IMG/VR virus record: IMGVR_UViG_3300046507_000773
Location: 1-64,000 of that record
Direction: 5' to 3' (one strand)
DNA: 64,000 nucleotides
In this document: positions 12,089 to 54,511 of the stretch, piece by piece
Numbering within the stretch: the stretch's first letter is position 1
Layout: every line of letters starts with the position of its first letter
Made by a program: the position numbers and the translations under genes
The notes under the pieces: model-generated
Told to the model about the DNA's origin: nothing
What the model saw: only the letters and a program-made list of their open reading frames with translations
Databases searched by the model: none

Positions 12089-12301
12089 ATGAAGCACTTT
12101 GTCTATTTCATCTCTGGTGTTCTTGTCGCCAGTTTCGTGCAACTCGGCATTCCGGCTGCTAAAGCCTGGGGCCTGCAGGAGCAACTCAAGAAAGACCGTG
12201 CCAAGTACCAGCTCTATCTGGACTGCCGCGACAAAGAAAAAACCAAGTACGCCACTTACGAGTGTCTGCGTCTGAACAACCTGGGCTTCGAACAGCTCTA
12301 A
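12089..12301 (+). CDS. Small protein with signal peptide/TM
   Basis: 70 aa, hydrophobic N-terminus, two Cys. Confidence 0.7.
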   Translation: MKHFVYFISGVLVASFVQLGIPAAKAWGLQEQLKKDRAKYQLYLDCRDKEKTKYATYECLRLNNLGFEQL

Positions 12302-12312
12302 GGAAAAAGAAC

Positions 12313-13359
12313 ATGAAACAGTACTACGACACCGTGAACTTCATTCGCGAAACCGGTGACCAGCTGGAAAACCGTACCGGTATCGATGCGATCACGGTAC
12401 CGGGCGTTGCAATGTATTTCCGCATGAAGGACGGCTTCCCGATGCTGGGTGGTCGCTTTACGCCCTTCAAGTCCATGATCGGTGAACTGTGTGCATTCTA
12501 TCGCGCTTGCACCAGCGCTGCTCAATTCCGTGAGCTGGGCAGCAAGGTCTGGGATAAGAACGCCAATGATCTTGGCGTCGACAATTCGAACGCCTGGCTG
12601 CGTAACCCGTTCCGTGAAGGCGAAGACCACCTGGGCCCGATCTACGGTGACATGTGGCGCGCATGGCCCGGCTACAAAGTTATCGGCCGTCCTTCGATCG
12701 ATGAACCCGATGAAGCACATATGCGCTATGACGAGATCATAGCGCAGATCGAAAAGGACGGCTGGGAGCACATCGGTTACGCCGAGGTCGGCTCACCCGG
12801 TACACCGAAAGGTCTTCTGTATTACAAAAAGATCGATCAACTGGGTGACGCGATCCGTACCGTCATCAAGAACCCGAACAGCCGCCGCATCCTGTTCCAT
12901 GCCTGGAATCCGGCCGTGCTGGACGAAGTCTCGCTGCCTGCCTGTCACCTGCTGTATCAGCTGCTGCCGAATCCGAAAACGAAGGTGCTGAACCTGTGCG
13001 TGTACCTGCGCTCCAACGACATCGGCCTGGGTGCTCCGTACAACATCTCGCAAGCTGCGGCTCAGTTGCACTTCATCTCTCGTCTGACCGGCTATACGCC
13101 TGGCACTATTTCGTACTTCGCTGCTGATGCCCACGTCTACGTCAATCAGCTTGAATGGCTGGACGAACAGCTGGAACTGTGGAATGCGGGTCAGCGTTAC
13201 GAACTGCCGCGCATCGAAATCAGCGACCGGGTGCCGGACTGTAGTCATGATGCAGAAAAAGCAGTGGCCTGGCTTACTGAAGTAGAACCATCGGACTTCA
13301 TCCTGCACGACTACCAGTACCACACCCTGAAAACCCCAACCCCTCCCATGGCGGTGTGA
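12313..13359 (+). CDS. thyA: Thymidylate synthase (ThyA type)
   Basis: NPNSRRILFHAWNP, LPACH catalytic Cys, YLRSNDIGLGAPYN, DAHVYVNQ. Start reassigned to ATG 12313 after AAGGA. Confidence 0.95.
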   Translation: MKQYYDTVNFIRETGDQLENRTGIDAITVPGVAMYFRMKDGFPMLGGRFTPFKSMIGELCAFYRACTSAAQFRELGSKVWDKNANDLGVDNSNAWLRNPFREGEDHLGPIYGDMWRAWPGYKVIGRPSIDEPDEAHMRYDEIIAQIEKDGWEHIGYAEVGSPGTPKGLLYYKKIDQLGDAIRTVIKNPNSRRILFHAWNPAVLDEVSLPACHLLYQLLPNPKTKVLNLCVYLRSNDIGLGAPYNISQAAAQLHFISRLTGYTPGTISYFAADAHVYVNQLEWLDEQLELWNAGQRYELPRIEISDRVPDCSHDAEKAVAWLTEVEPSDFILHDYQYHTLKTPTPPMAV

Positions 13360-13973: not shown

Positions 13974-15071
13974 ATGCAGTTGAATTTCGATGACGAGGAC
14001 ACCCTCGTCACCAACCAAGCAGCACCGGAAGGTGCTTCCGCAGCAGACGTCGCTAAGCGTGTGAACGTCAGCGAGAAGCGCATCATCAACGGTAAAACGG
14101 ACGTGAACCAGCTGGTTCCGTTCAAGCACAAGTGGGCCTGGGACAAGTATCTGGCAGGTTGCGCAAACCACTGGATGCCGCAAGAAGTGAACATGCAGCG
14201 CGATATCGAACTGTGGAAAGATCCGAAAGGTCTGTCCGATGACGAACGTCGCCTGGTCAAGCGCAACCTCGGCTTCTTCGTGACCGCCGACTCGCTGGCA
14301 GCCAACAACATCGTGCTGGGCACCTATCGCCACATCACGTCGCCGGAATGCCGCCAGTACCTGCTGCGTCAAGCTTTCGAAGAAGCGATCCACACCCACG
14401 CCTACCAGTACATCGTCGAGTCGCTCGGCCTGGACGAGAAGGAAGTCTTCAACGCGTACAACGAGATCCCGTCGATCCGTAATAAGGACCAGTTCCTGAT
14501 TCCGTTCATCGACGTTTTGACCAACCCGGAATTCAAAACCGGCACGATCGAAGCGGATCAGACGCTCCTGAAGTCCCTGATCGTTTTCGCCTGCATGATG
14601 GAAGGCCTGTTCTTCTACGTGGGCTTCACGCAGATCCTGGCACTGGGTCGTCAAAACAAGATGGTCGGCGCCGCCGAGCAGTATCAATACATCTTGCGCG
14701 ACGAATCGATGCACTGCAACTTCGGCATCGACCTGATCAACTCGATCAAGGCAGAAGACGATCGCCTGTTCACGCCGGCATTCCAGGAAGAGATCAAAGC
14801 CCTGTTCCATCAGGCTGTTGAACTCGAATGCGCTTACGCTGACGACACCATGCCGCGTGGCGTGCTGGGTCTGAATGCAGGCATGTTCAAAGCGTACCTG
14901 CGCTTCATCGCCAACCGTCGTGCTGTGCAGATCGGCTTGCCGCCGCTCTTCGCACAGGAAGAAAACCCGTTCCCGTGGATGGCCGAGATGATCGACCTGA
15001 AGAAGGAGCGTAACTTCTTCGAAACCCGTGTTACCGAATATCAAACCGGTGGCGCACTGAACTGGGATTAA
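13974..15071 (+). CDS. nrdB: Ribonucleotide reductase class Ia beta subunit
   Basis: [23 protein letters not shown] (radical Tyr retained), [23 protein letters not shown]. Confidence 0.97.
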
Positions 15072-29664: not shown

Positions 29665-30546
29665 ATGATTAAGAGCGATAAGTGGATCAAGTCCAAGTGC
29701 ATGTTGCCCTTGGCGGTTGCGCATTACATGGTGCGTGGTTCGGCCTTCGATGGTCCGTTCCGAAAGCACGAATTTATCTACGGCGATGCGACCACCGACA
29801 TCGACGCGGAGTTCGACAAAATCGTCAACCGTGTTTCGCAGGAGAACAACGTCATCAGCGGTTCGACGCAACTGGAATACGTTGGCGACATCCAGGTCAA
29901 CGACTTCCAGCCGATGATCGAACCTTTCGTGCCGACGCAAATCCGGACTGCTGGCCATGACCGACATGTCCGCATGCTGGCGATGCCGCGCAATACGCCG
30001 CAAGAAATGCTGGCCCGCACGCTCCTGGATTTCGATGGCGACGACGAATTCGAAAAGCGTAAGATCATCTCGCGTGGTCTGACGAGCTTCGGTTACGATG
30101 TGACGCTGGCTGAAGAAGCTGCAATCTTCACCAACGTCAACTGCGCCGTCATCGATCCGCTGAACTTTACGGAAGACACGCTGCAGCGCGTCATTGCGAA
30201 AGACGGCTACTTCCTCATGCCGCCCAACAGCTACCTGCTGGGTTACACGAAGGAGTACTTCCGCATGCCGCGTAATGTCATTGCCGTCGCGCTGGGCAAG
30301 TCGACTTACGCTCGTGCCGGCGCCATCGTGAACGTCACACCGATCGAACCGGGCTTTGAAGGTACCGTCGTCATCGAGATCGCCAACGCGACCAGCCTGC
30401 CGATGAAGGTCTACGCCAACCAGGGTATCGCACAGTTCCTCTTCTTCGAATCCGACGAAGACTGTGAAACCTCCTACGCTGACCGTAATGGTGGCGAAGG
30501 TGGCAAGTACCAGGGCCAACGCGGCCTGGTGACTCCGCGGGGCTAA
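29665..30546 (+). CDS. dcd: dCTP deaminase with two N-terminal insertions
   Basis: [61 protein letters not shown]. Confidence 0.92.
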
Positions 30547-40693: not shown

Positions 40694-40749
40694 TTCAATT
40701 AAGGCCTCATTCCCACAGTGGGGCAACTATCTAGGAAGGATAAAAAGAA

Positions 40750-41703
40750 ATGACTCTCGTAGTTTTCAAGAACGGAATTCTCGCCACCGATTCGCGCCGC
40801 ACGCACGTGTGTTCCAGAACCCACTCGAACAAGTGTCCTTACTGCGAAAAGCCCGCTGTCTCGGTAAAGGACGATGCGGACAAACTTTTCGTCGTTCGAA
40901 AGAAAGGTTCCATCAAGTTTCGTAACGTCACCATTCTCGCGTACGCGTGTGCTGGCGATGTCGAGATGATTAACCGCATTAAAGGGGTCCTTCGTCTGCA
41001 CGATGATCTCGAAGCGGTGTACAAGAGCTACCTCGCTATTCATGGTACGCATACCAAGAACGAGCGCACCTGCACTGTCATGCTCATCGGCGTGGAACAC
41101 AACTTCATCGTTCGCATCCCCGAACAAGGCAGTCTGGATGTGAAGGTTTTCGAGAAGGACAAGTTCCTCGCCATCGGTTCCGGCACGCAGGGGGCACGCT
41201 GGATCAATAAGCTCATGCCTGAAGCATGGGCACCGCTCATTATCAACATGGTGATGGAGGACGACATTGGCGTTGGCGGTACGATCTCGTACGTGGATCT
41301 GAATGAAGAGATAGAGGAAGGCAGTCTGCGTCCTCCAGTCATGCTTCATGTCCCGAACGATCCGAAAGCCATGATTGAACGCGCCAACAAGGTCTTCAGC
41401 ATGGGTGAAGCTGTCGAAGCGGAAAATGAAGTGGTCAAGGTTCGCAAGGAAGCAGGTTATCCTGAAGTCTGGGATTTGCCGATCTCCGACCTGGGGCTGA
41501 AAGTGCATACGCTCAACAACTTGATGACTGAAGGCGGCATTACCCATGTCGCTGAACTCATCATGTTCACGCCGCAAACGCTCCTGAAGATCCCCAAGAT
41601 CGGCAAGGTGGCACTGCAAGAAGTCCACGCCCGCCTGAAAGATCGTAAGCTCACCCTGGGCACCGATACCAACAGCTGGCCGAATCACAAGAAGGCAAAG
41701 TAA
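40750..41703 (+). CDS. HslV/Ntn-hydrolase-like peptidase fused to an RNAP alpha-subunit C-terminal domain
   Basis: Thr at position 2 (MTLVVF..GILATDSR), FLAIGSG. The C-terminal 80 aa align to the alpha-CTD through LTLG....SWP. Confidence 0.85.
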   Translation: MTLVVFKNGILATDSRRTHVCSRTHSNKCPYCEKPAVSVKDDADKLFVVRKKGSIKFRNVTILAYACAGDVEMINRIKGVLRLHDDLEAVYKSYLAIHGTHTKNERTCTVMLIGVEHNFIVRIPEQGSLDVKVFEKDKFLAIGSGTQGARWINKLMPEAWAPLIINMVMEDDIGVGGTISYVDLNEEIEEGSLRPPVMLHVPNDPKAMIERANKVFSMGEAVEAENEVVKVRKEAGYPEVWDLPISDLGLKVHTLNNLMTEGGITHVAELIMFTPQTLLKIPKIGKVALQEVHARLKDRKLTLGTDTNSWPNHKKAK

Positions 41704-41705
41704 CA

Positions 41706-42044
41706 GTGGATCGACTTATCGACGTCGACGTGGTTAGTCGCATGTATCCGGGTCAGATGGTGCAGCTTTACCTGATGGCTTCGTGGCTCTATTACTGGCA
41801 GGATGATTCTGTCATGACGGATCATGCGTTTGACTACATGTGCAAATGCTTGTTGGCTGAGTTCGATAACTTCGAGCACATTCACAAGCATTTAATCGAC
41901 AAGGAAAGCTTAGAAGCTGGAACGTGTCTTTTAGCCAAAGATGCGTTTCCTCAGCGCGTCAGGCATGCTGCTGATGGTTTGTTGCGCTCCATTGCAACAG
42001 ATGGCTTCTGGGACGATGTCGAGCCCCGGTTAAAACCAGCATAA
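41706..42044 (+). CDS. Stand-alone NAD-dependent DNA ligase subdomain Ia-like protein
   Basis: YLMASWLYYWQDDSVMTDHAFDYMCKCL resembles LigA Ia (YY..D.P.isD.eYD.L). Confidence 0.65.
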   Translation: MDRLIDVDVVSRMYPGQMVQLYLMASWLYYWQDDSVMTDHAFDYMCKCLLAEFDNFEHIHKHLIDKESLEAGTCLLAKDAFPQRVRHAADGLLRSIATDGFWDDVEPRLKPA

Positions 42045-46296: not shown

Positions 46297-48474
46297 ATGA
46301 ATCCGTTCCAAAACAAAACCAAGAAGCCGGCACTGCCGGATTCGCAAACCGCGGTCATGCTGCGCTCCACCCTGAGCCAGCTGAACAAGAACAGCTCGCT
46401 GCTGAGCTCGCAAGTTGCCCGCGGCGCCTTCGCCCTGGAAGGTCTGGACGACGAAACCGTCCTGGCCATGGACAACGCAGCTGAAGGCCTGAACGTCGCC
46501 CTGGAACAGATCTTCCAGGAAGCCGGCTTCAAAGCAACCCCGCAGCAGAAGCAGTCGGCAATGATCGCCGGCATGATGGGCGGCGACGTGGGCGCCTACC
46601 TGGGCCACGCTGTTTCCCTGGAAGGTTTCCAGGCCAAGAACACCGACGTCGTGATCGTCGGCGCCGCTGACGCAATCGCCTCGCGTCCGGCAATGGAAGC
46701 GTACGACGAGAAGGAACTGAAGAACTCGATCGCCTACTCGGTCGCGTACAACATGAACTCGCCGCGTCAAGACGCGTTCGGCGAAGCCTTCTTCCCGACC
46801 GTCGTCGTGAACCCGGACCAGGTCGGCTACCAGATCTCGATCCGCCTGACCTACGTCTACCCGGAAGTCCGCCGCAACATCGACGGCTCCGTCAACGACT
46901 TCAAGAAGCGCAACATCATCCAGGCAATCGTCGACCCGTCGATCCTGAAGACCGAGCAGCTGAAGGTCGTGCCGGTGTTCCGTAACGAATCGAAGGCCAA
47001 CTTCGTCGACGAAACCCTGCTGCCGCCGAAGAACATCACCTTCGAAGGCGAGACCATCACCACCAGCGCCCTGCGCTTCGACAACAAGTTCTCGCTGCTG
47101 GGCATCTCCCAGACCCCGGCCCTGCTGGAAACCGGCGTCATGGACAGCACCGACGCGCTGGACGCGGCGATCACGCTGAGCAACGTCTACATGTCGGTCG
47201 CCGGCAAAGTGGGCGGCGTCGACAAGACCGAGGTGTTCAAGTTCATGACGGCCAACATGCCGCTGTCGAACTTCATCTCGATGCAGCAAGACGACTACCG
47301 CATGATGCAAGTCACCTTCATGACCGAAGGCCTGCTGATGACCGGTAACACCAAGACCGTCGCTGGCGCCGCTTCGGGCGTGCTGGCCGACATCGCTGCA
47401 CAGAAGGTCTCGGTCCGTCTGGAACTGACCGTGAACGGCACCGTGAACGTCGAACTGGGTACCACCAACCTGATGGCATCGAAAGTGCGCGTCAAGTCGG
47501 TCACCGACGAAGACGGCAACCTGCTGTCGCTGACCTCGCCGGGCGTCGGCAAGGACATCGCGGACCTGTTCGCAACGGCTGAAGCCATCGGCTACGACCT
47601 GCAAGCGCAGCGTACCAACAGCAACCGTCGTCAGCGCGGCACCCTGCTGGGCCAGACGATCCAGAACCAGGTGTACAACGTGCCCCTGCGCTCGCCGATC
47701 ACCATCCCGCGTCCGCAAACCGTTGGCGATGCCAACGACGCCTCGGACCTGGCTGCACTGATCTCGACGACCCGCATCCGCATCTCGAACGCGGCCGTCG
47801 ACAAGCTGCTGGAAACCGCTGACCAGCTGAAAGAGCTGGTTGCCCAGAACGACCTGCTGGAAAACAACCTGCCGATCCTGGGTATCGCCCGTCACCTGGT
47901 GACCGCCTTCTACGACGAGTTCACCGTCGACGTGCAAGCGTCGATGAACAACCTGACCTCGTCCGAGAAGTACGACGACATCAGCGCCACGCTGATCAAC
48001 CAACTGCGCGACCTCGTGTATCGCATGCTGGTGAAATCGGCCTACCAGGCTGCTGCTGACGCGCTGGCTGGCGGCATCGCTCCGATGCCTGACGTCATCA
48101 TCGGTACCGATCCGAAGACCGCTCGCTACCTGATGGTTTCGGGCGACCTGCGCACCCTCGGCACCGAAGTGAACATCAAGCTGGTCACCACGCTGAACCT
48201 GCAGATGCGCGACACCATCATCGTCGCCTTCGGCCAGCCGAACGCCGGCGACGGTACGCCGAACCCGCTGCACTACGGCAACATGGTCTGGAAACCGGAA
48301 ATGACCCTGATCATGCCGACCCAGCGTAACGGCTCGAACTCGAAAGAGATCACCGTCACCCCGTCGTTCAACCACATCGTGAACGTGCCGATCATGGCCC
48401 GTATCTACGTGAAGGGCATCAGCGACGCGGTGGGCAGCAAAAGCACTGTTGCCTTCGAACAGGTCGGTCCGTAA
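46297..48474 (+). CDS. Major capsid protein (phiKZ gp120-like)
   Basis: 725 aa, extreme codon bias, N-terminal A/S-x-E maturation-type sites (ALE, SLE, AME), QDAFGEAFFPT, synteny. Confidence 0.92.
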   Translation: MNPFQNKTKKPALPDSQTAVMLRSTLSQLNKNSSLLSSQVARGAFALEGLDDETVLAMDNAAEGLNVALEQIFQEAGFKATPQQKQSAMIAGMMGGDVGAYLGHAVSLEGFQAKNTDVVIVGAADAIASRPAMEAYDEKELKNSIAYSVAYNMNSPRQDAFGEAFFPTVVVNPDQVGYQISIRLTYVYPEVRRNIDGSVNDFKKRNIIQAIVDPSILKTEQLKVVPVFRNESKANFVDETLLPPKNITFEGETITTSALRFDNKFSLLGISQTPALLETGVMDSTDALDAAITLSNVYMSVAGKVGGVDKTEVFKFMTANMPLSNFISMQQDDYRMMQVTFMTEGLLMTGNTKTVAGAASGVLADIAAQKVSVRLELTVNGTVNVELGTTNLMASKVRVKSVTDEDGNLLSLTSPGVGKDIADLFATAEAIGYDLQAQRTNSNRRQRGTLLGQTIQNQVYNVPLRSPITIPRPQTVGDANDASDLAALISTTRIRISNAAVDKLLETADQLKELVAQNDLLENNLPILGIARHLVTAFYDEFTVDVQASMNNLTSSEKYDDISATLINQLRDLVYRMLVKSAYQAAADALAGGIAPMPDVIIGTDPKTARYLMVSGDLRTLGTEVNIKLVTTLNLQMRDTIIVAFGQPNAGDGTPNPLHYGNMVWKPEMTLIMPTQRNGSNSKEITVTPSFNHIVNVPIMARIYVKGISDAVGSKSTVAFEQVGP

Positions 48475-50779: not shown

Positions 50780-52426
50780 GTGAGCATGGGAGATAGAGAG
50801 CTAGGGCGTCTCATCGATTTACATACGCCTAAGCTGAATCCTCGCACTGCCAAAGGCCTTGCTGTGGAGCATTTGCAGAAACCTGAACTGTACATCGATC
50901 AGGTGATGCGCTCCGCAGCAAAAGGTTTCCCTGTTGGGTTGCACTACCTCGGCTTTTCCCACACGACGCCGATGGAAGAGTTCAACGAGCAAAAGCGTCG
51001 ACCCAGCAGTAACCGTGGCAATAAGAAGCAGTACGACATTGCGCGCTCGGACGTGTACATGGTGAAGTTCCACTTCCGCTGGCAACCACCGGGCTTACCC
51101 CCGGAAGACTTGCCGCCGCGGTATATCTCTTTGCCGTTTGTCGGCGAAGCAGGTACGATCTATATCAGTGGAAGCCGGTTTGTCATCTCGCCAATCATGG
51201 CAGACCGGGTGATCTCTGTGGGCGAATCGGATGTCTTTGTGCGGTTGCTCCGTGCGAAGCTGACGTTCAAACGCATGGGTCACCACTACCGCATCAACGG
51301 TCAGATCGAGACCGTCAACGTGGTGTGGTCGGAAATCCATAACGGCCGTAGCAAAACAAAGGGGACCAGCGGGGCAGGCAAAGCAAAAACGACGATGATG
51401 CATTACTTGTTGGGCAAGTACGGCTTCACCGAAACGTTTGCTCGCTTCGGGAAATGTTATCCGGTTATTGGTGGACCGGAGATCAACGCCAACAATTACC
51501 CGGCATCGGAATGGACCATCTGTTCCAGCAGCGAAGTCAAACCGCGCAATGCATCGCGTGGCAGCTATGCGCCTTCCACCGTGCGCCTGGCAATTCGCAA
51601 TGAAGAGTTCACCCCAACCGTCAAGTCGATGGTGGCTGGATTCTTCTACATCGCCGACTACTTCCCGCATCGCGTGATTCCCGAGACGCGCTATGTGGAC
51701 TCGCAGCGTCTGTGGATGATCCTGATGGGTCACATTCTGTTCTCTTCGCTTTCCATGGAAGGACAGTTGTACGACAACATCGCGGACCATTACCATTCGC
51801 TTGACTACTACATCGACATCATCGTCGATCAGCAGTTGCGAGAAATCGGTATCGCAGTCGATAACGTGTACCACCTGTTCCATGTCATCATCGAGAATTT
51901 CGACAAGTGGGTTGTGAACTCCGGTGACAAGATGACGAGTGTGTACGACAAGGAGCTGAACGTTCGTCACTTCTTGTTGCACGATATCACTTCGTCGATC
52001 ATGAACATGAACTTCCGTCTGAATGCAGCGGCCAAGAAGGAGCTGACCAAGAAGGAAATCATCAAGATCATGGACGCTACCTTGCGTTCTGGCACGATCT
52101 TCCTGATCACGAAGAAGCACGGCGAAGTGTCAACCCTGTCGTCTCCGGGTGACAACATGGCATTCAAGATGACGGCCATGCTGATCCCGCAGTCGGAATC
52201 GAACAAGCAGTCCAAACGTAATGATCGAGGCATCCTCACCGATCCCTCGAAGCGGTTCCACGTATCGGTGATCGAGATCTGCTGTTACTCGAACCTACCG
52301 AAGAGTGGACCAGACGGCCGCCAACGTCTCAATCATTGCGCTCGTCTTGACGATCGTAATGTGGTGCAAAGGAATCCTGTATTCGTGCCTATTCTGGATG
52401 AAGTGCAGGAACTCATTAAGCGGTGA
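50780..52426 (+). CDS. Non-virion RNA polymerase beta subunit, N-terminal half (phiKZ gp123-like)
   Basis: 548 aa. YISLPFVGEAG.IYISGS.FVISP, HVSVIE.C.Y.NLPKS.PDGR.RLN, synteny. Confidence 0.85.
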   Translation: MSMGDRELGRLIDLHTPKLNPRTAKGLAVEHLQKPELYIDQVMRSAAKGFPVGLHYLGFSHTTPMEEFNEQKRRPSSNRGNKKQYDIARSDVYMVKFHFRWQPPGLPPEDLPPRYISLPFVGEAGTIYISGSRFVISPIMADRVISVGESDVFVRLLRAKLTFKRMGHHYRINGQIETVNVVWSEIHNGRSKTKGTSGAGKAKTTMMHYLLGKYGFTETFARFGKCYPVIGGPEINANNYPASEWTICSSSEVKPRNASRGSYAPSTVRLAIRNEEFTPTVKSMVAGFFYIADYFPHRVIPETRYVDSQRLWMILMGHILFSSLSMEGQLYDNIADHYHSLDYYIDIIVDQQLREIGIAVDNVYHLFHVIIENFDKWVVNSGDKMTSVYDKELNVRHFLLHDITSSIMNMNFRLNAAAKKELTKKEIIKIMDATLRSGTIFLITKKHGEVSTLSSPGDNMAFKMTAMLIPQSESNKQSKRNDRGILTDPSKRFHVSVIEICCYSNLPKSGPDGRQRLNHCARLDDRNVVQRNPVFVPILDEVQELIKR

Positions 52427-52465: not shown

Positions 52466-54511
52466 ATGATGTTCAATCAATCGAATGACCTGCCGTTCGA
52501 TCCCGTCAACCTGCAAGTCCAGCCGATCAACTTCAGCTTGCAGAATCCGCCGTACGTGCCGAACAACGTGAATACCCACGAAGCGTTGTACGATTACGTT
52601 CCGGCGATCTGCGCGCTGCTGGCCAACGAAATCCAAACCAAGGCCACGGCAAGCAATACGAACTTCCTCCGGGTGTTCATGTACAACCAGTGCGCTCCGA
52701 ACAACTTCGCTACCGAAGCGTTCGACCAGCTGGTGCATGCAACCCTGGACTTCGTCGTCTACATCCTGACCCCGCCGGTATCCATCCAGAACCCGTCGGT
52801 CGAAGCGGCTATCGAGTACGCCGTCCCCGAGATGGTGTACATGATGGCTGCCTACAACTGCCAGCAATACCCGCGTCTGGGTAGCGAGGTGCCGCAGCAA
52901 CTCGTTGGTACGCTGAAGGCGCTGATCGAACAGTACCACTTCGTCAGCAAGGAAATCGAGAACCTCAAGCGCGGCGGTCAGAAGTCGAACAACGCCAGCA
53001 TGGGTAATCGCTCGGCGTTCGGTGGTCGTGGTTCGTTCGGTGGTGGTCAAGCCAACAACAACAACCGCGGCTCGTTCGGCGGTGGTGGACAGCAGCAGCA
53101 AAGCAGCTTCGGTGGCTTCGGCAATCGCAACAACAACCAGAACGCCAACACCAATCGCAGCTTCGGCGCCAGCTCGGGTCTGTTCAGCAATACCAGCAGC
53201 ACCCCGATGGGCTTTGGCAAGCAAACCAATTCGTTCGGTGGCGGCGCGTCGCAGCCTGCTACCCAAATCGAAACCAAGCAAACCACCGGCAGCAAGTATC
53301 CGCAGCCGAACTTCAGCAAAGGAACCAACATGCAGCCTGCAGCACAAGCACCGCAGCAATCGCTGGCCGAAGAGCTGTCGTTCGAATCGCCGGCCGGCCC
53401 GTCGAACGAGGACTACACCGCCACCGACTGGGTACCGTCCAAGCGTTACCCGTACTTCCCGGCGTTTAACCCCGCTACCATGACCCTGTCGTACGAAATC
53501 CAGGCCGACGGGACCACTCATCCGATCTTGAAGAAAAGGGACCCGAATATGGAATACGACCGCCACGCTTTGCCGAGTGTTTTCGGTAACGCGCCGGAAA
53601 GCTACGACCTGAGCCGCACGGCTCAATCGCTGCAACGTATCCAGAAGGGCACGCTTGCCATCAACAGCGAAGCAGCCCTGGCTGCAGCGCCGGTCGAAGA
53701 AGGTCAGGAAGAGCCGAAAACGGTTCTGAATCACCCGGAATGGTTCATCGAGACGTCGCTGACCGGCGCCTGGCTCGTGACCCAGCTGGCTCGTCTGGAA
53801 CTGGACCAGTCCCCGGACGTGTTCCGTGCCAACGCGATGGTGACTTCCCCGATCATCGTGACCCCGGCCGAGAAGGAAACCGTCTCGATCCTGTCCAAGT
53901 GCATGACCTACAAGGGCCTGCGCGAACAGATGGAAGCTGCGTACACCCGGATGACCCCGGAACTGTACCAGGCTCTGAACACCCGGATCACCCGGATCGT
54001 GAACCAGAGCATCCGTCTGGAGATGGGCATTCCGAAGCTGTCGATGACGGACTTCCGTACCGACATCGTCGAAGTGCTCGAGTACATGGAAGAGCGTTAC
54101 GGCAAGGACGTGCTCAACGCGTTCACCTCGCGTCAGGAAGCGCACATCAAAGAAGCGATGGCAACCCTGGACGACGAAGCCTCGGCCAAGATGGTCGACA
54201 GCTTCCTGGCTGGCAAGAAGTTCCCGAACGACATCGCGCCGACGATGCTCTGCCTGGCAACCAACTTCAGCCTGACCGTCGTGAACGTGCGTTCGTTCGA
54301 CCTCGAGCTGGAACTGGGCAACGATGGCCTGGGTTCGGCAGTCACGCCGGAAGCTGTACCGGAAATCCATGAGCTGGTCAAGGGTCTGTTCACGGCGCCG
54401 CACGCCGAGATGGTGCATCGTCACCTGATCCGCACGCAAGACGGCCGCGTCATGGAAGCTGCGCAAGGTGCGCTGGGTGACGGTTACTACACCCTGTCGC
54501 TGGTCGAGTAA
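52466..54511 (+). CDS. Conserved-block protein with an FG/N/Q-rich disordered insert
   Basis: 681 aa with strong codon bias. Low-complexity segment at about residues 170-290. Confidence 0.85.
   Translation: MMFNQSNDLPFDPVNLQVQPINFSLQNPPYVPNNVNTHEALYDYVPAICALLANEIQTKATASNTNFLRVFMYNQCAPNNFATEAFDQLVHATLDFVVYILTPPVSIQNPSVEAAIEYAVPEMVYMMAAYNCQQYPRLGSEVPQQLVGTLKALIEQYHFVSKEIENLKRGGQKSNNASMGNRSAFGGRGSFGGGQANNNNRGSFGGGGQQQQSSFGGFGNRNNNQNANTNRSFGASSGLFSNTSSTPMGFGKQTNSFGGGASQPATQIETKQTTGSKYPQPNFSKGTNMQPAAQAPQQSLAEELSFESPAGPSNEDYTATDWVPSKRYPYFPAFNPATMTLSYEIQADGTTHPILKKRDPNMEYDRHALPSVFGNAPESYDLSRTAQSLQRIQKGTLAINSEAALAAAPVEEGQEEPKTVLNHPEWFIETSLTGAWLVTQLARLELDQSPDVFRANAMVTSPIIVTPAEKETVSILSKCMTYKGLREQMEAAYTRMTPELYQALNTRITRIVNQSIRLEMGIPKLSMTDFRTDIVEVLEYMEERYGKDVLNAFTSRQEAHIKEAMATLDDEASAKMVDSFLAGKKFPNDIAPTMLCLATNFSLTVVNVRSFDLELELGNDGLGSAVTPEAVPEIHELVKGLFTAPHAEMVHRHLIRTQDGRVMEAAQGALGDGYYTLSLVE

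What the first reader, a model, noticed from the sequence alone, without database searches (positions are those of the whole stretch)
40750..41703. Ntn/HslV-type protease fused to an RNA polymerase alpha-CTD
Seen: an N-terminal Thr nucleophile, ATDSR and AIGSG, a CxxC-containing insert, then LPISDLGLKVHTLNNL...LLKIPKIGKVALQEV...L..R.LTLG....SWP. Known: this aligns residue by residue with E. coli alpha 256-322. The UP-element contacts R265, K298 and S299 read H, V and A here. Alpha-CTD is the docking surface for many activators and NusA. Inference: a bait-and-cleave enzyme that lures alpha-CTD-binding host regulators to a protease.
Basis: partly seen in the sequence, partly recalled or inferred. 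Interest (0 to 1): 0.8.

Follow-up and report, generated by a model that had tools for sequence, protein, structure and literature searches.

The report
Phage proteasome-like peptidase fused to alpha-CTD
A giant phiKZ-type phage from rhizosphere soil encodes a proteasome/HslV-like threonine peptidase whose usual lysine-rich tail is replaced by a copy of the C-terminal domain of the bacterial RNA polymerase alpha subunit; this fusion was found in only one small phage clade and its target is untested.

Summary
ORF 40750-41703 (+, 317 aa) has a proteasome-beta/HslV-type N-terminal-nucleophile domain at residues 1-~235. An AlphaFold model has pLDDT about 95, and Foldseek matches 20S beta subunits at probability 1.0. 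T2, D14, K45, G69 and G143 (in a nearly invariant G-S-G) are invariant in 63 relatives. Residues 236-312 match Pfam RNA_pol_A_CTD above its gathering score and align with E. coli alpha 248-323, where R265, K298 and S299 read H, V and A.

The fusion is real. Contigs from several metagenomes bridge the junction, a 64%-identical ortholog keeps the architecture, and the CTD is the best-conserved part. Among 1.84 billion representative proteins only this clade has both domains.

About 60 relatives lack the CTD. Most of those with a tail of 15 residues or more have a Lys/Pro/Ala-rich basic one. The nearest alpha-CTD relatives where context is readable are multi-CTD proteins of other large phages, not host RpoA. 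The residues that contact activators and sigma in E. coli are not kept.

I therefore favour an outward-facing anchoring module, most likely for DNA or DNA-bound complexes, on an active peptidase. I classify it as a new variant of a known kind.

The parts
40733..40739 (+). Ribosome-binding site AGGAAGG, 10 nt before the ATG. An in-frame TAA at 40741-40743 rules out any N-terminal extension or propeptide.
   Evidence: sequence; open frame begins at 40744
40750..41703 (+). Whole gene: 317-aa fusion protein, stop codon included.
   Evidence: A 100% identical copy lies on IMG/VR contig IMGVR_UViG_3300046507_000773 of 226,810 bp.
40753..41349 (+). Proteasome-beta/HslV-type Ntn-hydrolase core, residues 2-200. 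Predicted nucleophile Thr2 (40753-40755), Asp14 (40789-40791), Lys45 (40882-40884), oxyanion Gly69 (40954-40956), G143-S144-G145 (41176-41184), G176-G177.
   Evidence: PHROG 1040; invariant columns in 63 sequences; profile hit to proteasome beta; AF2 pLDDT about 95; Foldseek PDB and BFVD
40801..40869 (+). Family-specific insertion of about 15 extra residues between the Asp17- and Lys33-equivalents. It holds the invariant C29-x-x-C32 (40834-40845). Its role is unknown; metal binding or covering of the active site are possibilities.
   Evidence: C29 and C32 invariant in 63/63; modelled with pLDDT 83-91. The insertion-site analogy to connectase comes from PMC8665760.
41362..41454 (+). Long C-terminal helix of the peptidase family (residues 205-234) plus a short linker. 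It is also present in CTD-less relatives and is not derived from RpoA.
   Evidence: helix 205-234; conserved 'DP..' helix in relatives; residues 179-240 alone give no RpoA match
41455..41685 (+). RNA polymerase alpha-CTD-type helix-hairpin-helix domain, residues 236-312 = E. coli alpha 248-323. H253 (41506-41508) = R265; V287-A288 (41608-41613) = K298-S299. The flanking motifs YPxVWD and LGTDTxxWP are shared with phage-borne alpha-CTD modules.
41686..41700 (+). Short basic C-terminal tail HKKAK, conserved as HKKA in the 64% ortholog.
41706..42044 (+). Downstream 112-aa gene. Its GTG start lies 2 nt after the stop, so it is probably co-transcribed or translationally coupled. It matches PHROG 19233 of unknown function and is conserved next to the ortholog in L001.

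Best explanation
The gene encodes an active N-terminal-threonine peptidase of the proteasome-beta/HslV superfamily. It belongs to a family common in jumbo and other large phages.

Shown:
- Thr is exposed simply by removal of the initiator Met, as in HslV, and no propeptide is possible.
- The residues equivalent to proteasome Thr1, Asp17, Lys33 and Gly47 are invariant, and the G-S-G is nearly so.
- In this small clade the family's usual Lys/Pro/Ala-rich C-terminal tail has been replaced by an alpha-CTD-type helix-hairpin-helix domain.
- That domain resembles a set of alpha-CTD modules circulating in large phages.

Inferred: the C-terminus of proteasome-like subunits points away from the ring, so the alpha-CTD is displayed outward on a flexible arm and acts as the enzyme's anchoring or targeting module. 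The most likely target is DNA (AT-rich minor groove or backbone) or DNA-bound complexes. The peptidase would then act on DNA-associated proteins of the host nucleoid or of the phage's own replication and transcription compartment, in the way Lon couples DNA binding to proteolysis. The substrates are unknown.
For: - Catalytic competence. T2, D14, K45, G69 and G143 are invariant in 63 family members, and S144/G145 nearly so. All homologs align from residue 1. The fold is confirmed.
- Tail-for-domain swap. Of 60 CTD-less relatives, 38 have tails of 15 aa or more, and 34 of those have pI above 9 with K/P/A-rich composition. The likely ortholog P0003, on a related 269-kb phage contig, ends in such a tail.
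- The CTD is under the strongest constraint. Identity to the ortholog is 82% against 59% for the peptidase core, dN is 0.14 against 0.33, and omega is about 0.2.
- The window CTD is net basic (12 K+R against 9 D+E) whereas E. coli alpha-CTD is acidic (11 against 15). It keeps V264, N268, G296, K297 and E302 of the DNA-contact set, and N294 reads K.
- Elsewhere alpha-CTD repeats are attached to a T5orf172-type domain (P0106), which fits use as a generic DNA-binding module.
- The activator and sigma contact determinants are not conserved.
- C-terminal extensions of proteasome homologs face outward (PMC8665760).
- The phage has its own phiKZ-type RNA polymerase: a gp123 homolog scores E=2.8e-76. 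From my own knowledge, that enzyme has no alpha subunit and phiKZ does not need the host polymerase, so luring host activators is less obviously useful.
Against: - R265, the key UP-element contact in E. coli, is His in both orthologs. K298 and S299 are Val and Ala. Canonical UP-element binding is doubtful.
- A DNA-binding role for the basic tails is inferred from composition only.
- High conservation of the CTD and of the subfamily-specific YPxIWD and LGTDT motifs would equally fit a specific protein partner.
- The CTD part of the AF2 model is low-confidence (pLDDT 45-69), so no electrostatic surface could be computed.
- There are no expression, localisation or activity data. Oligomeric state is unknown.
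- No HslU-like unfoldase was seen among the large ORFs of the window.
Confidence: 0.4

Rival explanations
1. Bait-and-cleave. The alpha-CTD mimics the host polymerase's docking domain, captures host proteins that normally bind alpha-CTD (class I activators, NusA, Spx-like factors, or immune sensors watching RNAP), and hands them to the attached peptidase.
For: - A genuine alpha-CTD fold scores above the Pfam threshold.
- Loss of the DNA contacts R265, K298 and S299 would suit a decoy that should not stick to DNA.
- The CTD is the most conserved part of the protein.
- Phages are known to attack or use alpha-CTD, for example Rac-induced cleavage of alpha in phiKMV-like phages (PMC7552054).
Against: - The E. 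coli 261 and 287 determinants, used by sigma-70 region 4 and CAP, are not kept.
- The domain is nearer to phage-borne alpha-CTD modules (53-55 bits) than to E. coli RpoA (35 bits). It is not a close copy of a host alpha.
- CTD-less relatives carry basic tails rather than protein mimics.
- The phage encodes a homolog of a phiKZ nvRNAP subunit, so it may not depend on the host polymerase.
- The host and its alpha sequence are unknown.
Confidence: 0.2
2. Transcription-machinery targeting. The alpha-CTD docks the peptidase onto RNA polymerase or promoter complexes, so that components of the transcription apparatus are cleaved for host shut-off or for the early-to-late switch. Docking could be to sigma region 4, a resident alpha-CTD, NusA, or the phage's own alpha-less polymerase.
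For: - alpha-CTD naturally sits beside sigma region 4 and other alpha-CTDs at promoters (established knowledge).
- There is precedent for proteolytic removal of alpha-CTD during phage infection (PMC7552054).
- The phage polymerase lacks alpha (my own knowledge; gp123 homolog).
Against: - The sigma-contact residues D258 and E261 read S and G.
- No evidence places the protein at polymerase.
- The same argument from basic tails in relatives applies.
Confidence: 0.15
3. Site-specific processing enzyme. The insertion with the invariant CxxC lies between the Asp17 and Lys33 equivalents, close to the S3/S4 site where connectase carries the lid that confers sequence specificity. The protein could be a monomeric or small-oligomer, sequence-specific protease or transpeptidase, with the alpha-CTD as a substrate adaptor.
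For: - Invariant C29/C32 in an insertion of about 15 residues.
- Connectase uses an insertion at S3/S4 to cover the active site, and several proteasome homologs are predicted not to form rings (PMC8665760).
- No unfoldase partner was seen in the window.
Against: - Helices H1-H4, which make ring contacts, appear to be present in the model.
- Foldseek best matches are ring-forming beta subunits.
- Nothing identifies a substrate.
Confidence: 0.1
4. Multivalent competitor. The ring only serves as a scaffold that displays 6-14 alpha-CTDs. These block UP elements or soak up partners, and proteolysis is irrelevant.
For: Stand-alone phage proteins with 2-3 tandem alpha-CTDs exist. This suggests that multivalency matters for this module.
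Against: The complete catalytic set is invariant across the family, and the core is under purifying selection with omega about 0.23. Both argue that the enzyme activity is used.
Confidence: 0.1
5. Artefact: an assembly chimera or a chance ORF.
For: None found.
Against: - Contigs from runs X1, X2 and X3 bridge the domain junction.
- A 98% variant and a 64% ortholog have the same architecture on other contigs.
- omega is about 0.2.
Confidence: 0.01

Closest known systems
HslV (ClpQ), the peptidase of the bacterial HslVU protease
   Same: - Proteasome-beta fold.
- Thr nucleophile exposed directly after the initiator Met, with no propeptide.
- Equivalents of Asp17, Lys33 and Gly47 and the G-S-G motif are present.
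- Databases name the phage family 'peptidase HslV family'.
   Different: - It does not reach the HslV models. Pfam Proteasome gives no hit. TIGR03692 hits only a relative, at E=0.075.
- It has an extra insertion of about 15 residues with an invariant CxxC, an extra long C-terminal helix, and a C-terminal appendage.
- No HslU partner gene was seen.
- Foldseek ranks 20S beta subunits first.
Phage and bacterial proteasome-like homologs (PPH, AAH, RPC and others; Fuchs, Alva and Lupas 2021, PMC8665760)
   Same: - Proteasome homologs carried by phages, without a propeptide.
- C-terminal extensions are proposed to face outward as interaction sites.
- Structural neighbours are uncharacterised proteins of Noxifer, ME3, USC-1 and CcrBL9.
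   Different: - None of the described groups is reported with an alpha-CTD. A search of that paper's text for 'RNA polymerase' and 'fused' found nothing.
C-terminal domain of the bacterial RNA polymerase alpha subunit (RpoA residues about 249-329)
   Same: - Pfam PF03118 is matched above threshold.
- Identity to E. coli alpha-CTD is 38% over 68 residues.
- The helix-hairpin-helix Gly296, Asn268, Lys297, Trp321 and Pro322 are conserved.
   Different: - It is not attached to the alpha N-terminal assembly domain.
- R265, K298 and S299 read H, V and A.
- The 261 and 287 determinants are changed.
- It is net basic instead of acidic.
Phage-borne alpha-CTD modules: uncultured large-phage proteins with 1-3 alpha-CTD copies (P0042, P0046/P0154, P0035, P0038; P0073 and P0080 on short contigs)
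   Same: - They are the best-scoring single-domain relatives, at 53-55 bits against 35 for E. coli alpha.
- They share the flanking motifs YPxIWD and LGTDTGxW, Gly at position 261 and a hydrophobic residue at 298.
- They are encoded among small genes of a 272-kb contig and a 100-kb contig.
   Different: - They have no peptidase domain.
- Most keep Arg265.
- They come from a different phage lineage that shares only this module with the window.
- They are uncharacterised too.
Lon protease (working analogy only)
   Same: A protease that also binds DNA and degrades DNA-associated regulators (established knowledge).
   Different: Lon has an unrelated fold (AAA+ with a Ser-Lys dyad) and is a single polypeptide with its own unfoldase. 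This is no homology claim.
Phage attacks on alpha-CTD: LUZ19 Rac-induced cleavage of alpha; T4 Alt/ModA ADP-ribosylation of R265
   Same: They show that alpha-CTD function is a recurrent phage target (PMC7552054; T4 from established knowledge).
   Different: Those phages modify or remove the host's alpha-CTD. Here the phage carries its own copy.

Membership tests
Proteasome-beta / HslV Ntn-hydrolase superfamily | alpha-beta-beta-alpha sandwich fold of proteasome beta subunits | tested here: met
   AF2 pLDDT about 95 over residues 1-230. Foldseek against PDB: the 50 listed best hits are all 20S proteasome subunits (nearly all beta), E down to 6.7e-7, probability 1.0, TM by target 0.5-0.57.
Proteasome-beta / HslV Ntn-hydrolase superfamily | N-terminal Thr nucleophile with the Asp17, Lys33, Gly47 and Ser129 (G-S-G) equivalents | tested here: met
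   T2, D14, K45, G69 and G143 are invariant, and S144/G145 are at 90% or more, in 63 sequences. The alignment to proteasome beta is collinear. An in-frame stop 2 codons upstream forces Met-Thr.
Proteasome-beta / HslV Ntn-hydrolase superfamily | Peptidase activity and ring assembly | not testable with these tools
   Needs biochemistry or cryo-EM. No multimer prediction was available.
HslV proper (TIGR03692 / partner of HslU) | Sequence membership in the HslV equivalog model | tested here: not met
   The window protein gives no hit. Relative P0003 scores 12.7 bits against a cut-off of 157.75. Pfam Proteasome gives no hit. The family profile scores HslV chains only at E 0.5-1.2.
HslV proper (TIGR03692 / partner of HslU) | Adjacent or co-encoded HslU AAA+ unfoldase | tested here: inconclusive
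   No AAA+ family was found among the large ORFs of the 64-kb window. The other 160 kb or so of the phage genome and the host were not examined. The Salmonella jumbo phage pSal-SNUABM-04 is reported to encode HslV only (PMC7823757).
RNA polymerase alpha C-terminal domain (Pfam PF03118) | Profile match above the curated gathering score | tested here: met
   29.8 bits against 23.8, E=5e-7. RpoA chains in PDB score down to E=2.8e-7. The ESM Atlas structure match has TM 0.92 over residues 239-304.
RNA polymerase alpha C-terminal domain (Pfam PF03118) | UP-element/DNA-contact '265 determinant' (R265, N268, C269, G296, K298, S299) | tested here: not met
   The window reads H, N, N, G, V, A. Only N268 and G296 are kept.
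RNA polymerase alpha subunit (RpoA) | N-terminal dimerisation/assembly domain (PF01000, PF01193) preceding the CTD | tested here: not met
   No such Pfam hits. NCBIfam rpoA models match only the C-terminal part (residues 175-228 onward to about 305-315) and score far below their cut-offs. Residues 179-240 alone give no RpoA match.
Phage-borne alpha-CTD module set (defined here, provisional) | YPx(I/V)W(D/N) before helix 1, Gly at E. coli position 261, LG(T/M)(D/N)(T/I)xxW after the last helix | tested here: met
   All three are present in the window and P0002. They are shared with P0035, P0038, P0042, P0046, P0073 and P0080.

The most novel reading that the evidence does not exclude
Large phages carry their own alpha-CTD modules as molecular mimics of the host polymerase's docking domain. 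In this protein the mimic is wired to a proteasome-like peptidase, making a 'capture and destroy' device for host factors that recognise alpha-CTD, whether transcription activators, NusA-type factors or immune sensors. It would be the first viral protease whose substrate selector is a copy of a host RNA polymerase domain.
Probability: 0.2. Interest if true: 0.85.

Novelty: new variant of a known kind. Interest (0 to 1): 0.62.

Why it matters
Proteasome-like peptidases are widespread in large phages, and I found no published study of their function. This one has a recognisable appendage that hints at where such enzymes act.

An alpha-CTD outside RpoA, carried by a phage whose own polymerase has no alpha subunit, is unexpected. 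Together with the tandem alpha-CTD proteins found in other large phages, it points to an undescribed class of phage modules that either bind DNA or imitate the host transcription machinery.

Either outcome opens a testable route to a new host-takeover or counter-defence mechanism, whether the enzyme is a DNA-tethered protease or an RNA-polymerase-mimic bait. The protein is small (35 kDa) and easy to express and mutate.

Tried and rejected
1. AlphaFold on the single sequence gave pLDDT 34 and was unusable. It was replaced by the run on alignment A1.
2. A combined alignment of full-length homologs plus alpha-CTD fragments (A2) was misaligned by MAFFT, as checked, and was discarded. The CTD part of the model therefore stayed shallow and low-confidence.
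3. HMMER extended some RpoA alignments back to query residue 179, which suggested homology to the end of the alpha N-terminal domain. Residues 179-240 alone give no RpoA hit, and that segment is conserved in CTD-less relatives. I rejected this.
4. Erwinia phage RAY gp116, reported as a nuclear-localised 'HslVU family' protein, looked like localisation evidence. It is a 569-aa HslU-type ATPase and does not match the family profile, so I did not use it.
5. megablast and tblastn against 50,697 isolated phage genomes found no fusion. They found only RpoA in mislabelled bacterial records for the CTD and a weak hit in Xanthomonas phage RTH11 for the peptidase. More distant family members do find Noxifer, SPN3US-like and phiK7B1-like phages.
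6. The search for related loci with alignment A1 failed because no stretch was conserved enough.
7. Sigma-70 promoter and terminator scans around the gene were not enriched over shuffles. The palindrome CCCACAGTGGG upstream is not repeated in the window.
8. PADLOC gave no defence-family match for the protein.
9. Literature searches for phage-encoded alpha-CTD or PF03118 in phages found nothing relevant.
10. All neighbouring genes are hypothetical, so context gives no functional clue.

Full report
**What is there.** The window is part of a 226,810-bp IMG/VR viral contig. It belongs to a phiKZ-type jumbo phage.
- It carries a PhiKZ-type major capsid protein at 46297-48474 (PHROG 3231).
- It carries a DnaB helicase with its nearest DNA match in Ralstonia phages RP12/RP31.
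- It carries a clear homolog of phiKZ gp123, a subunit of the non-virion RNA polymerase, at E=2.8e-76 to PDB 7OGP.
- The DNA is found in several rhizosphere metagenomes.

ORF 40750-41703 (+) encodes 317 aa. An in-frame stop lies two codons before the ATG and a good ribosome-binding site precedes it. The protein must therefore begin Met-Thr.

**N-terminal domain.**
- PHROG 1040 'peptidase HslV family' matches residues 1-191 at E=2.9e-10.
- An exhaustive HMMER search of 1.84 billion representatives gave 246 hits. About 60 of the listed hits are 196-292-aa proteins that align from their first residue.
- In the 63-sequence alignment A1, the invariant residues are T2, D14, C29, C32, K45, G69, G143 and G177. 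S144 and G145 are nearly invariant.
- These correspond to proteasome Thr1, Asp17, Lys33, Gly47 and the G-S-G of Ser129 (mapping supported and by PMC8665760).
- The A1 profile hits 20S beta subunits at E=2.6e-4 and HslV only weakly.
- With A1 as input, AlphaFold gives pLDDT about 95 for residues 1-230.
- Foldseek returns only 20S proteasome subunits (nearly all beta) from the PDB, at probability 1.0.
- From the viral library Foldseek returns uncharacterised proteins of Noxifer, Acinetobacter phage ME3, Vibrio phage USC-1 and Caulobacter phage CcrBL9.
- tblastn with distant family members finds the family in Noxifer, SPN3US-like Salmonella phages, Proteus phage 7 and phiK7B1-like Pseudomonas phages, where it is annotated 'HslV family'.

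The domain does not reach the curated HslV or Pfam Proteasome models. It carries an insertion of about 15 residues with the invariant CxxC between the Asp and Lys. I therefore file it in the superfamily, not in HslV proper.

**C-terminal domain.**
- Pfam RNA_pol_A_CTD is matched above its gathering score.
- Almost all sequence matches to solved structures are RpoA.
- The ESM Atlas model superposes on alpha-CTD clusters with TM 0.92.
- I checked the residue mapping against the real E. coli rpoA fetched.
- The sigma-contact residues D258 and E261 read S and G.
- The CAP-contact residues E286, V287, E288, R317 and L318 read P, Q, T, D and T.
- The domain is net basic.

**Is the fusion real and how common is it?**
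- Contigs from three metagenome runs cross the junction.
- A 98% variant (P0001) and a 64% ortholog on a syntenic 99.5-kb contig (P0002, L001) have the same architecture.
- Between window and ortholog, the CTD is 82% identical (dN 0.14) and the peptidase core is 59% identical (dN 0.33). Both have omega about 0.2.
Only P0001 and P0002 have both.
- No ESM Atlas cluster combines them. No isolated phage has the fusion.

**Two comparisons that bear on function.**

First, the CTD-less relatives. 38 of 60 have C-terminal tails of 15 aa or more. 34 of those are strongly basic and Lys/Pro/Ala-rich. This composition resembles histone-H1-like and SPKK-type DNA-binding tails; that resemblance is my inference from established knowledge.

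P0003 sits in a related 269-kb phage contig, at a loosely comparable distance from a shared dCTP-deaminase-like gene. It ends in such a tail. The alpha-CTD thus occupies the place of a basic tail.

Second, the alpha-CTD itself.
- Its best single-domain relatives are not RpoA. They are proteins with one to three alpha-CTD copies that share the flanking motifs YPxIWD and LGTDTGxW.
- Where context is available, these lie among small genes of a 272-kb contig and a 100-kb contig.
- Those two contigs are related to each other but share only this module with the window.
- One of them has a second alpha-CTD gene.
- K298 to a hydrophobic residue, E261 to Gly and R317/L318 to D/T are traits of the whole set of domains. 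R265 to His is particular to the window clade, apart from one further domain, P0032_d2.

**Interpretation.** Shown: a catalytically complete Ntn peptidase, a bona fide alpha-CTD fold, a real and selected fusion, and replacement of a basic tail.

Inferred: the CTD faces outward (PMC8665760) and targets the enzyme. I favour DNA or DNA-bound complexes as the target, with confidence 0.4. The reasons are the tail swap, the basic charge, the loss of activator and sigma determinants, and the use of alpha-CTD repeats with a T5orf172-type domain (P0106).

The loss of R265, K298 and S299 is real evidence against canonical UP-element binding. A connectase-like site-specific enzyme (0.1) and a pure multivalent competitor (0.1) cannot be excluded.

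**Novelty.** Both domain families are known, and phage proteasome homologs have been catalogued (PMC8665760). The literature searched here describes no alpha-CTD fusion and no phage-borne alpha-CTD module. I class it as a new variant of a known kind, of above-average interest.

Noticed in passing
L008:10001-10819, L009:10001-11077 and L009:3707-4258; also P0035, P0038, P0073, P0080: Uncultured proteins carry one to three alpha-CTD-type domains with shared YPxIWD and LGTDTGxW motifs behind short unknown N-terminal domains. Where context exists they sit in large phage contigs of 272 kb and 100 kb. I found no description of phage-borne alpha-CTD modules in the papers searched.
   Followed up: partly
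window 40834-40845 (C29-x-x-C32) within the insertion 40801-40869: A CxxC pair is invariant in all 63 family members, but no third or fourth metal ligand is conserved. It lies in an insertion between the catalytic Asp and Lys, close to the S3/S4 site where connectase has its specificity lid. Possible roles are an inter-subunit metal site, a redox switch or an active-site cover. It remains unexplained.
   Followed up: partly
window 41706-42044 (+): A 112-aa gene starts with GTG two bases after the fusion gene's stop. It matches PHROG 19233 (unknown function, E=1e-24), with a faint resemblance to a PHROG labelled DNA ligase. It is conserved downstream of the ortholog in L001 but not next to the CTD-less P0003.
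   Followed up: no
window 50780-52426 (+): Homolog of phiKZ gp123, a subunit of the non-virion RNA polymerase (PDB 7OGP, E=2.8e-76). The phage therefore has its own phiKZ-type polymerase, which from my own knowledge has no alpha subunit.
   Followed up: partly
window 52466-54511 (+): In this 681-aa protein, residues 36-177 match PDB 9rp3 'Gp316/JADA' at E=1.2e-6. The rest matches PHROGs of unknown function.
   Followed up: no
window 41331-41333: A co-occurring strain variant, seen in runs X3 and X4 and equal to P0001, lacks 3 bases here. This removes one Pro of the RPPV stretch at residues 194-197, before the long C-terminal helix. It also carries about 40 substitutions in the stretch examined.
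   Followed up: partly
P0106 (314 aa) and BREX PglW models: alpha-CTD-type domains also occur behind a T5orf172 domain (P0106). They give weak matches to an internal region, around residues 760-865, of the BREX kinase PglW: NCBIfam E=0.18 for the window protein and PADLOC E=0.004 for P0046. This hints that the module is reused in mobile-element and defence proteins.
   Followed up: no
window 12262-13359, 13974-15071, 29665-30546: Nucleotide-metabolism genes: thymidylate synthase, the small subunit of ribonucleotide reductase, and a dCTP-deaminase-like gene. The last is shared with the related 269-kb phage contig (L002).
   Followed up: no
L010:1353-3062 (Erwinia phage RAY gp116): The RAY 'HslVU family' protein reported to localise to the phage nucleus is a 569-aa HslU-type ATPase, not a peptidase of the family studied here. 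Some jumbo phages therefore carry the ATPase-like half and others the peptidase-like half.
   Followed up: partly
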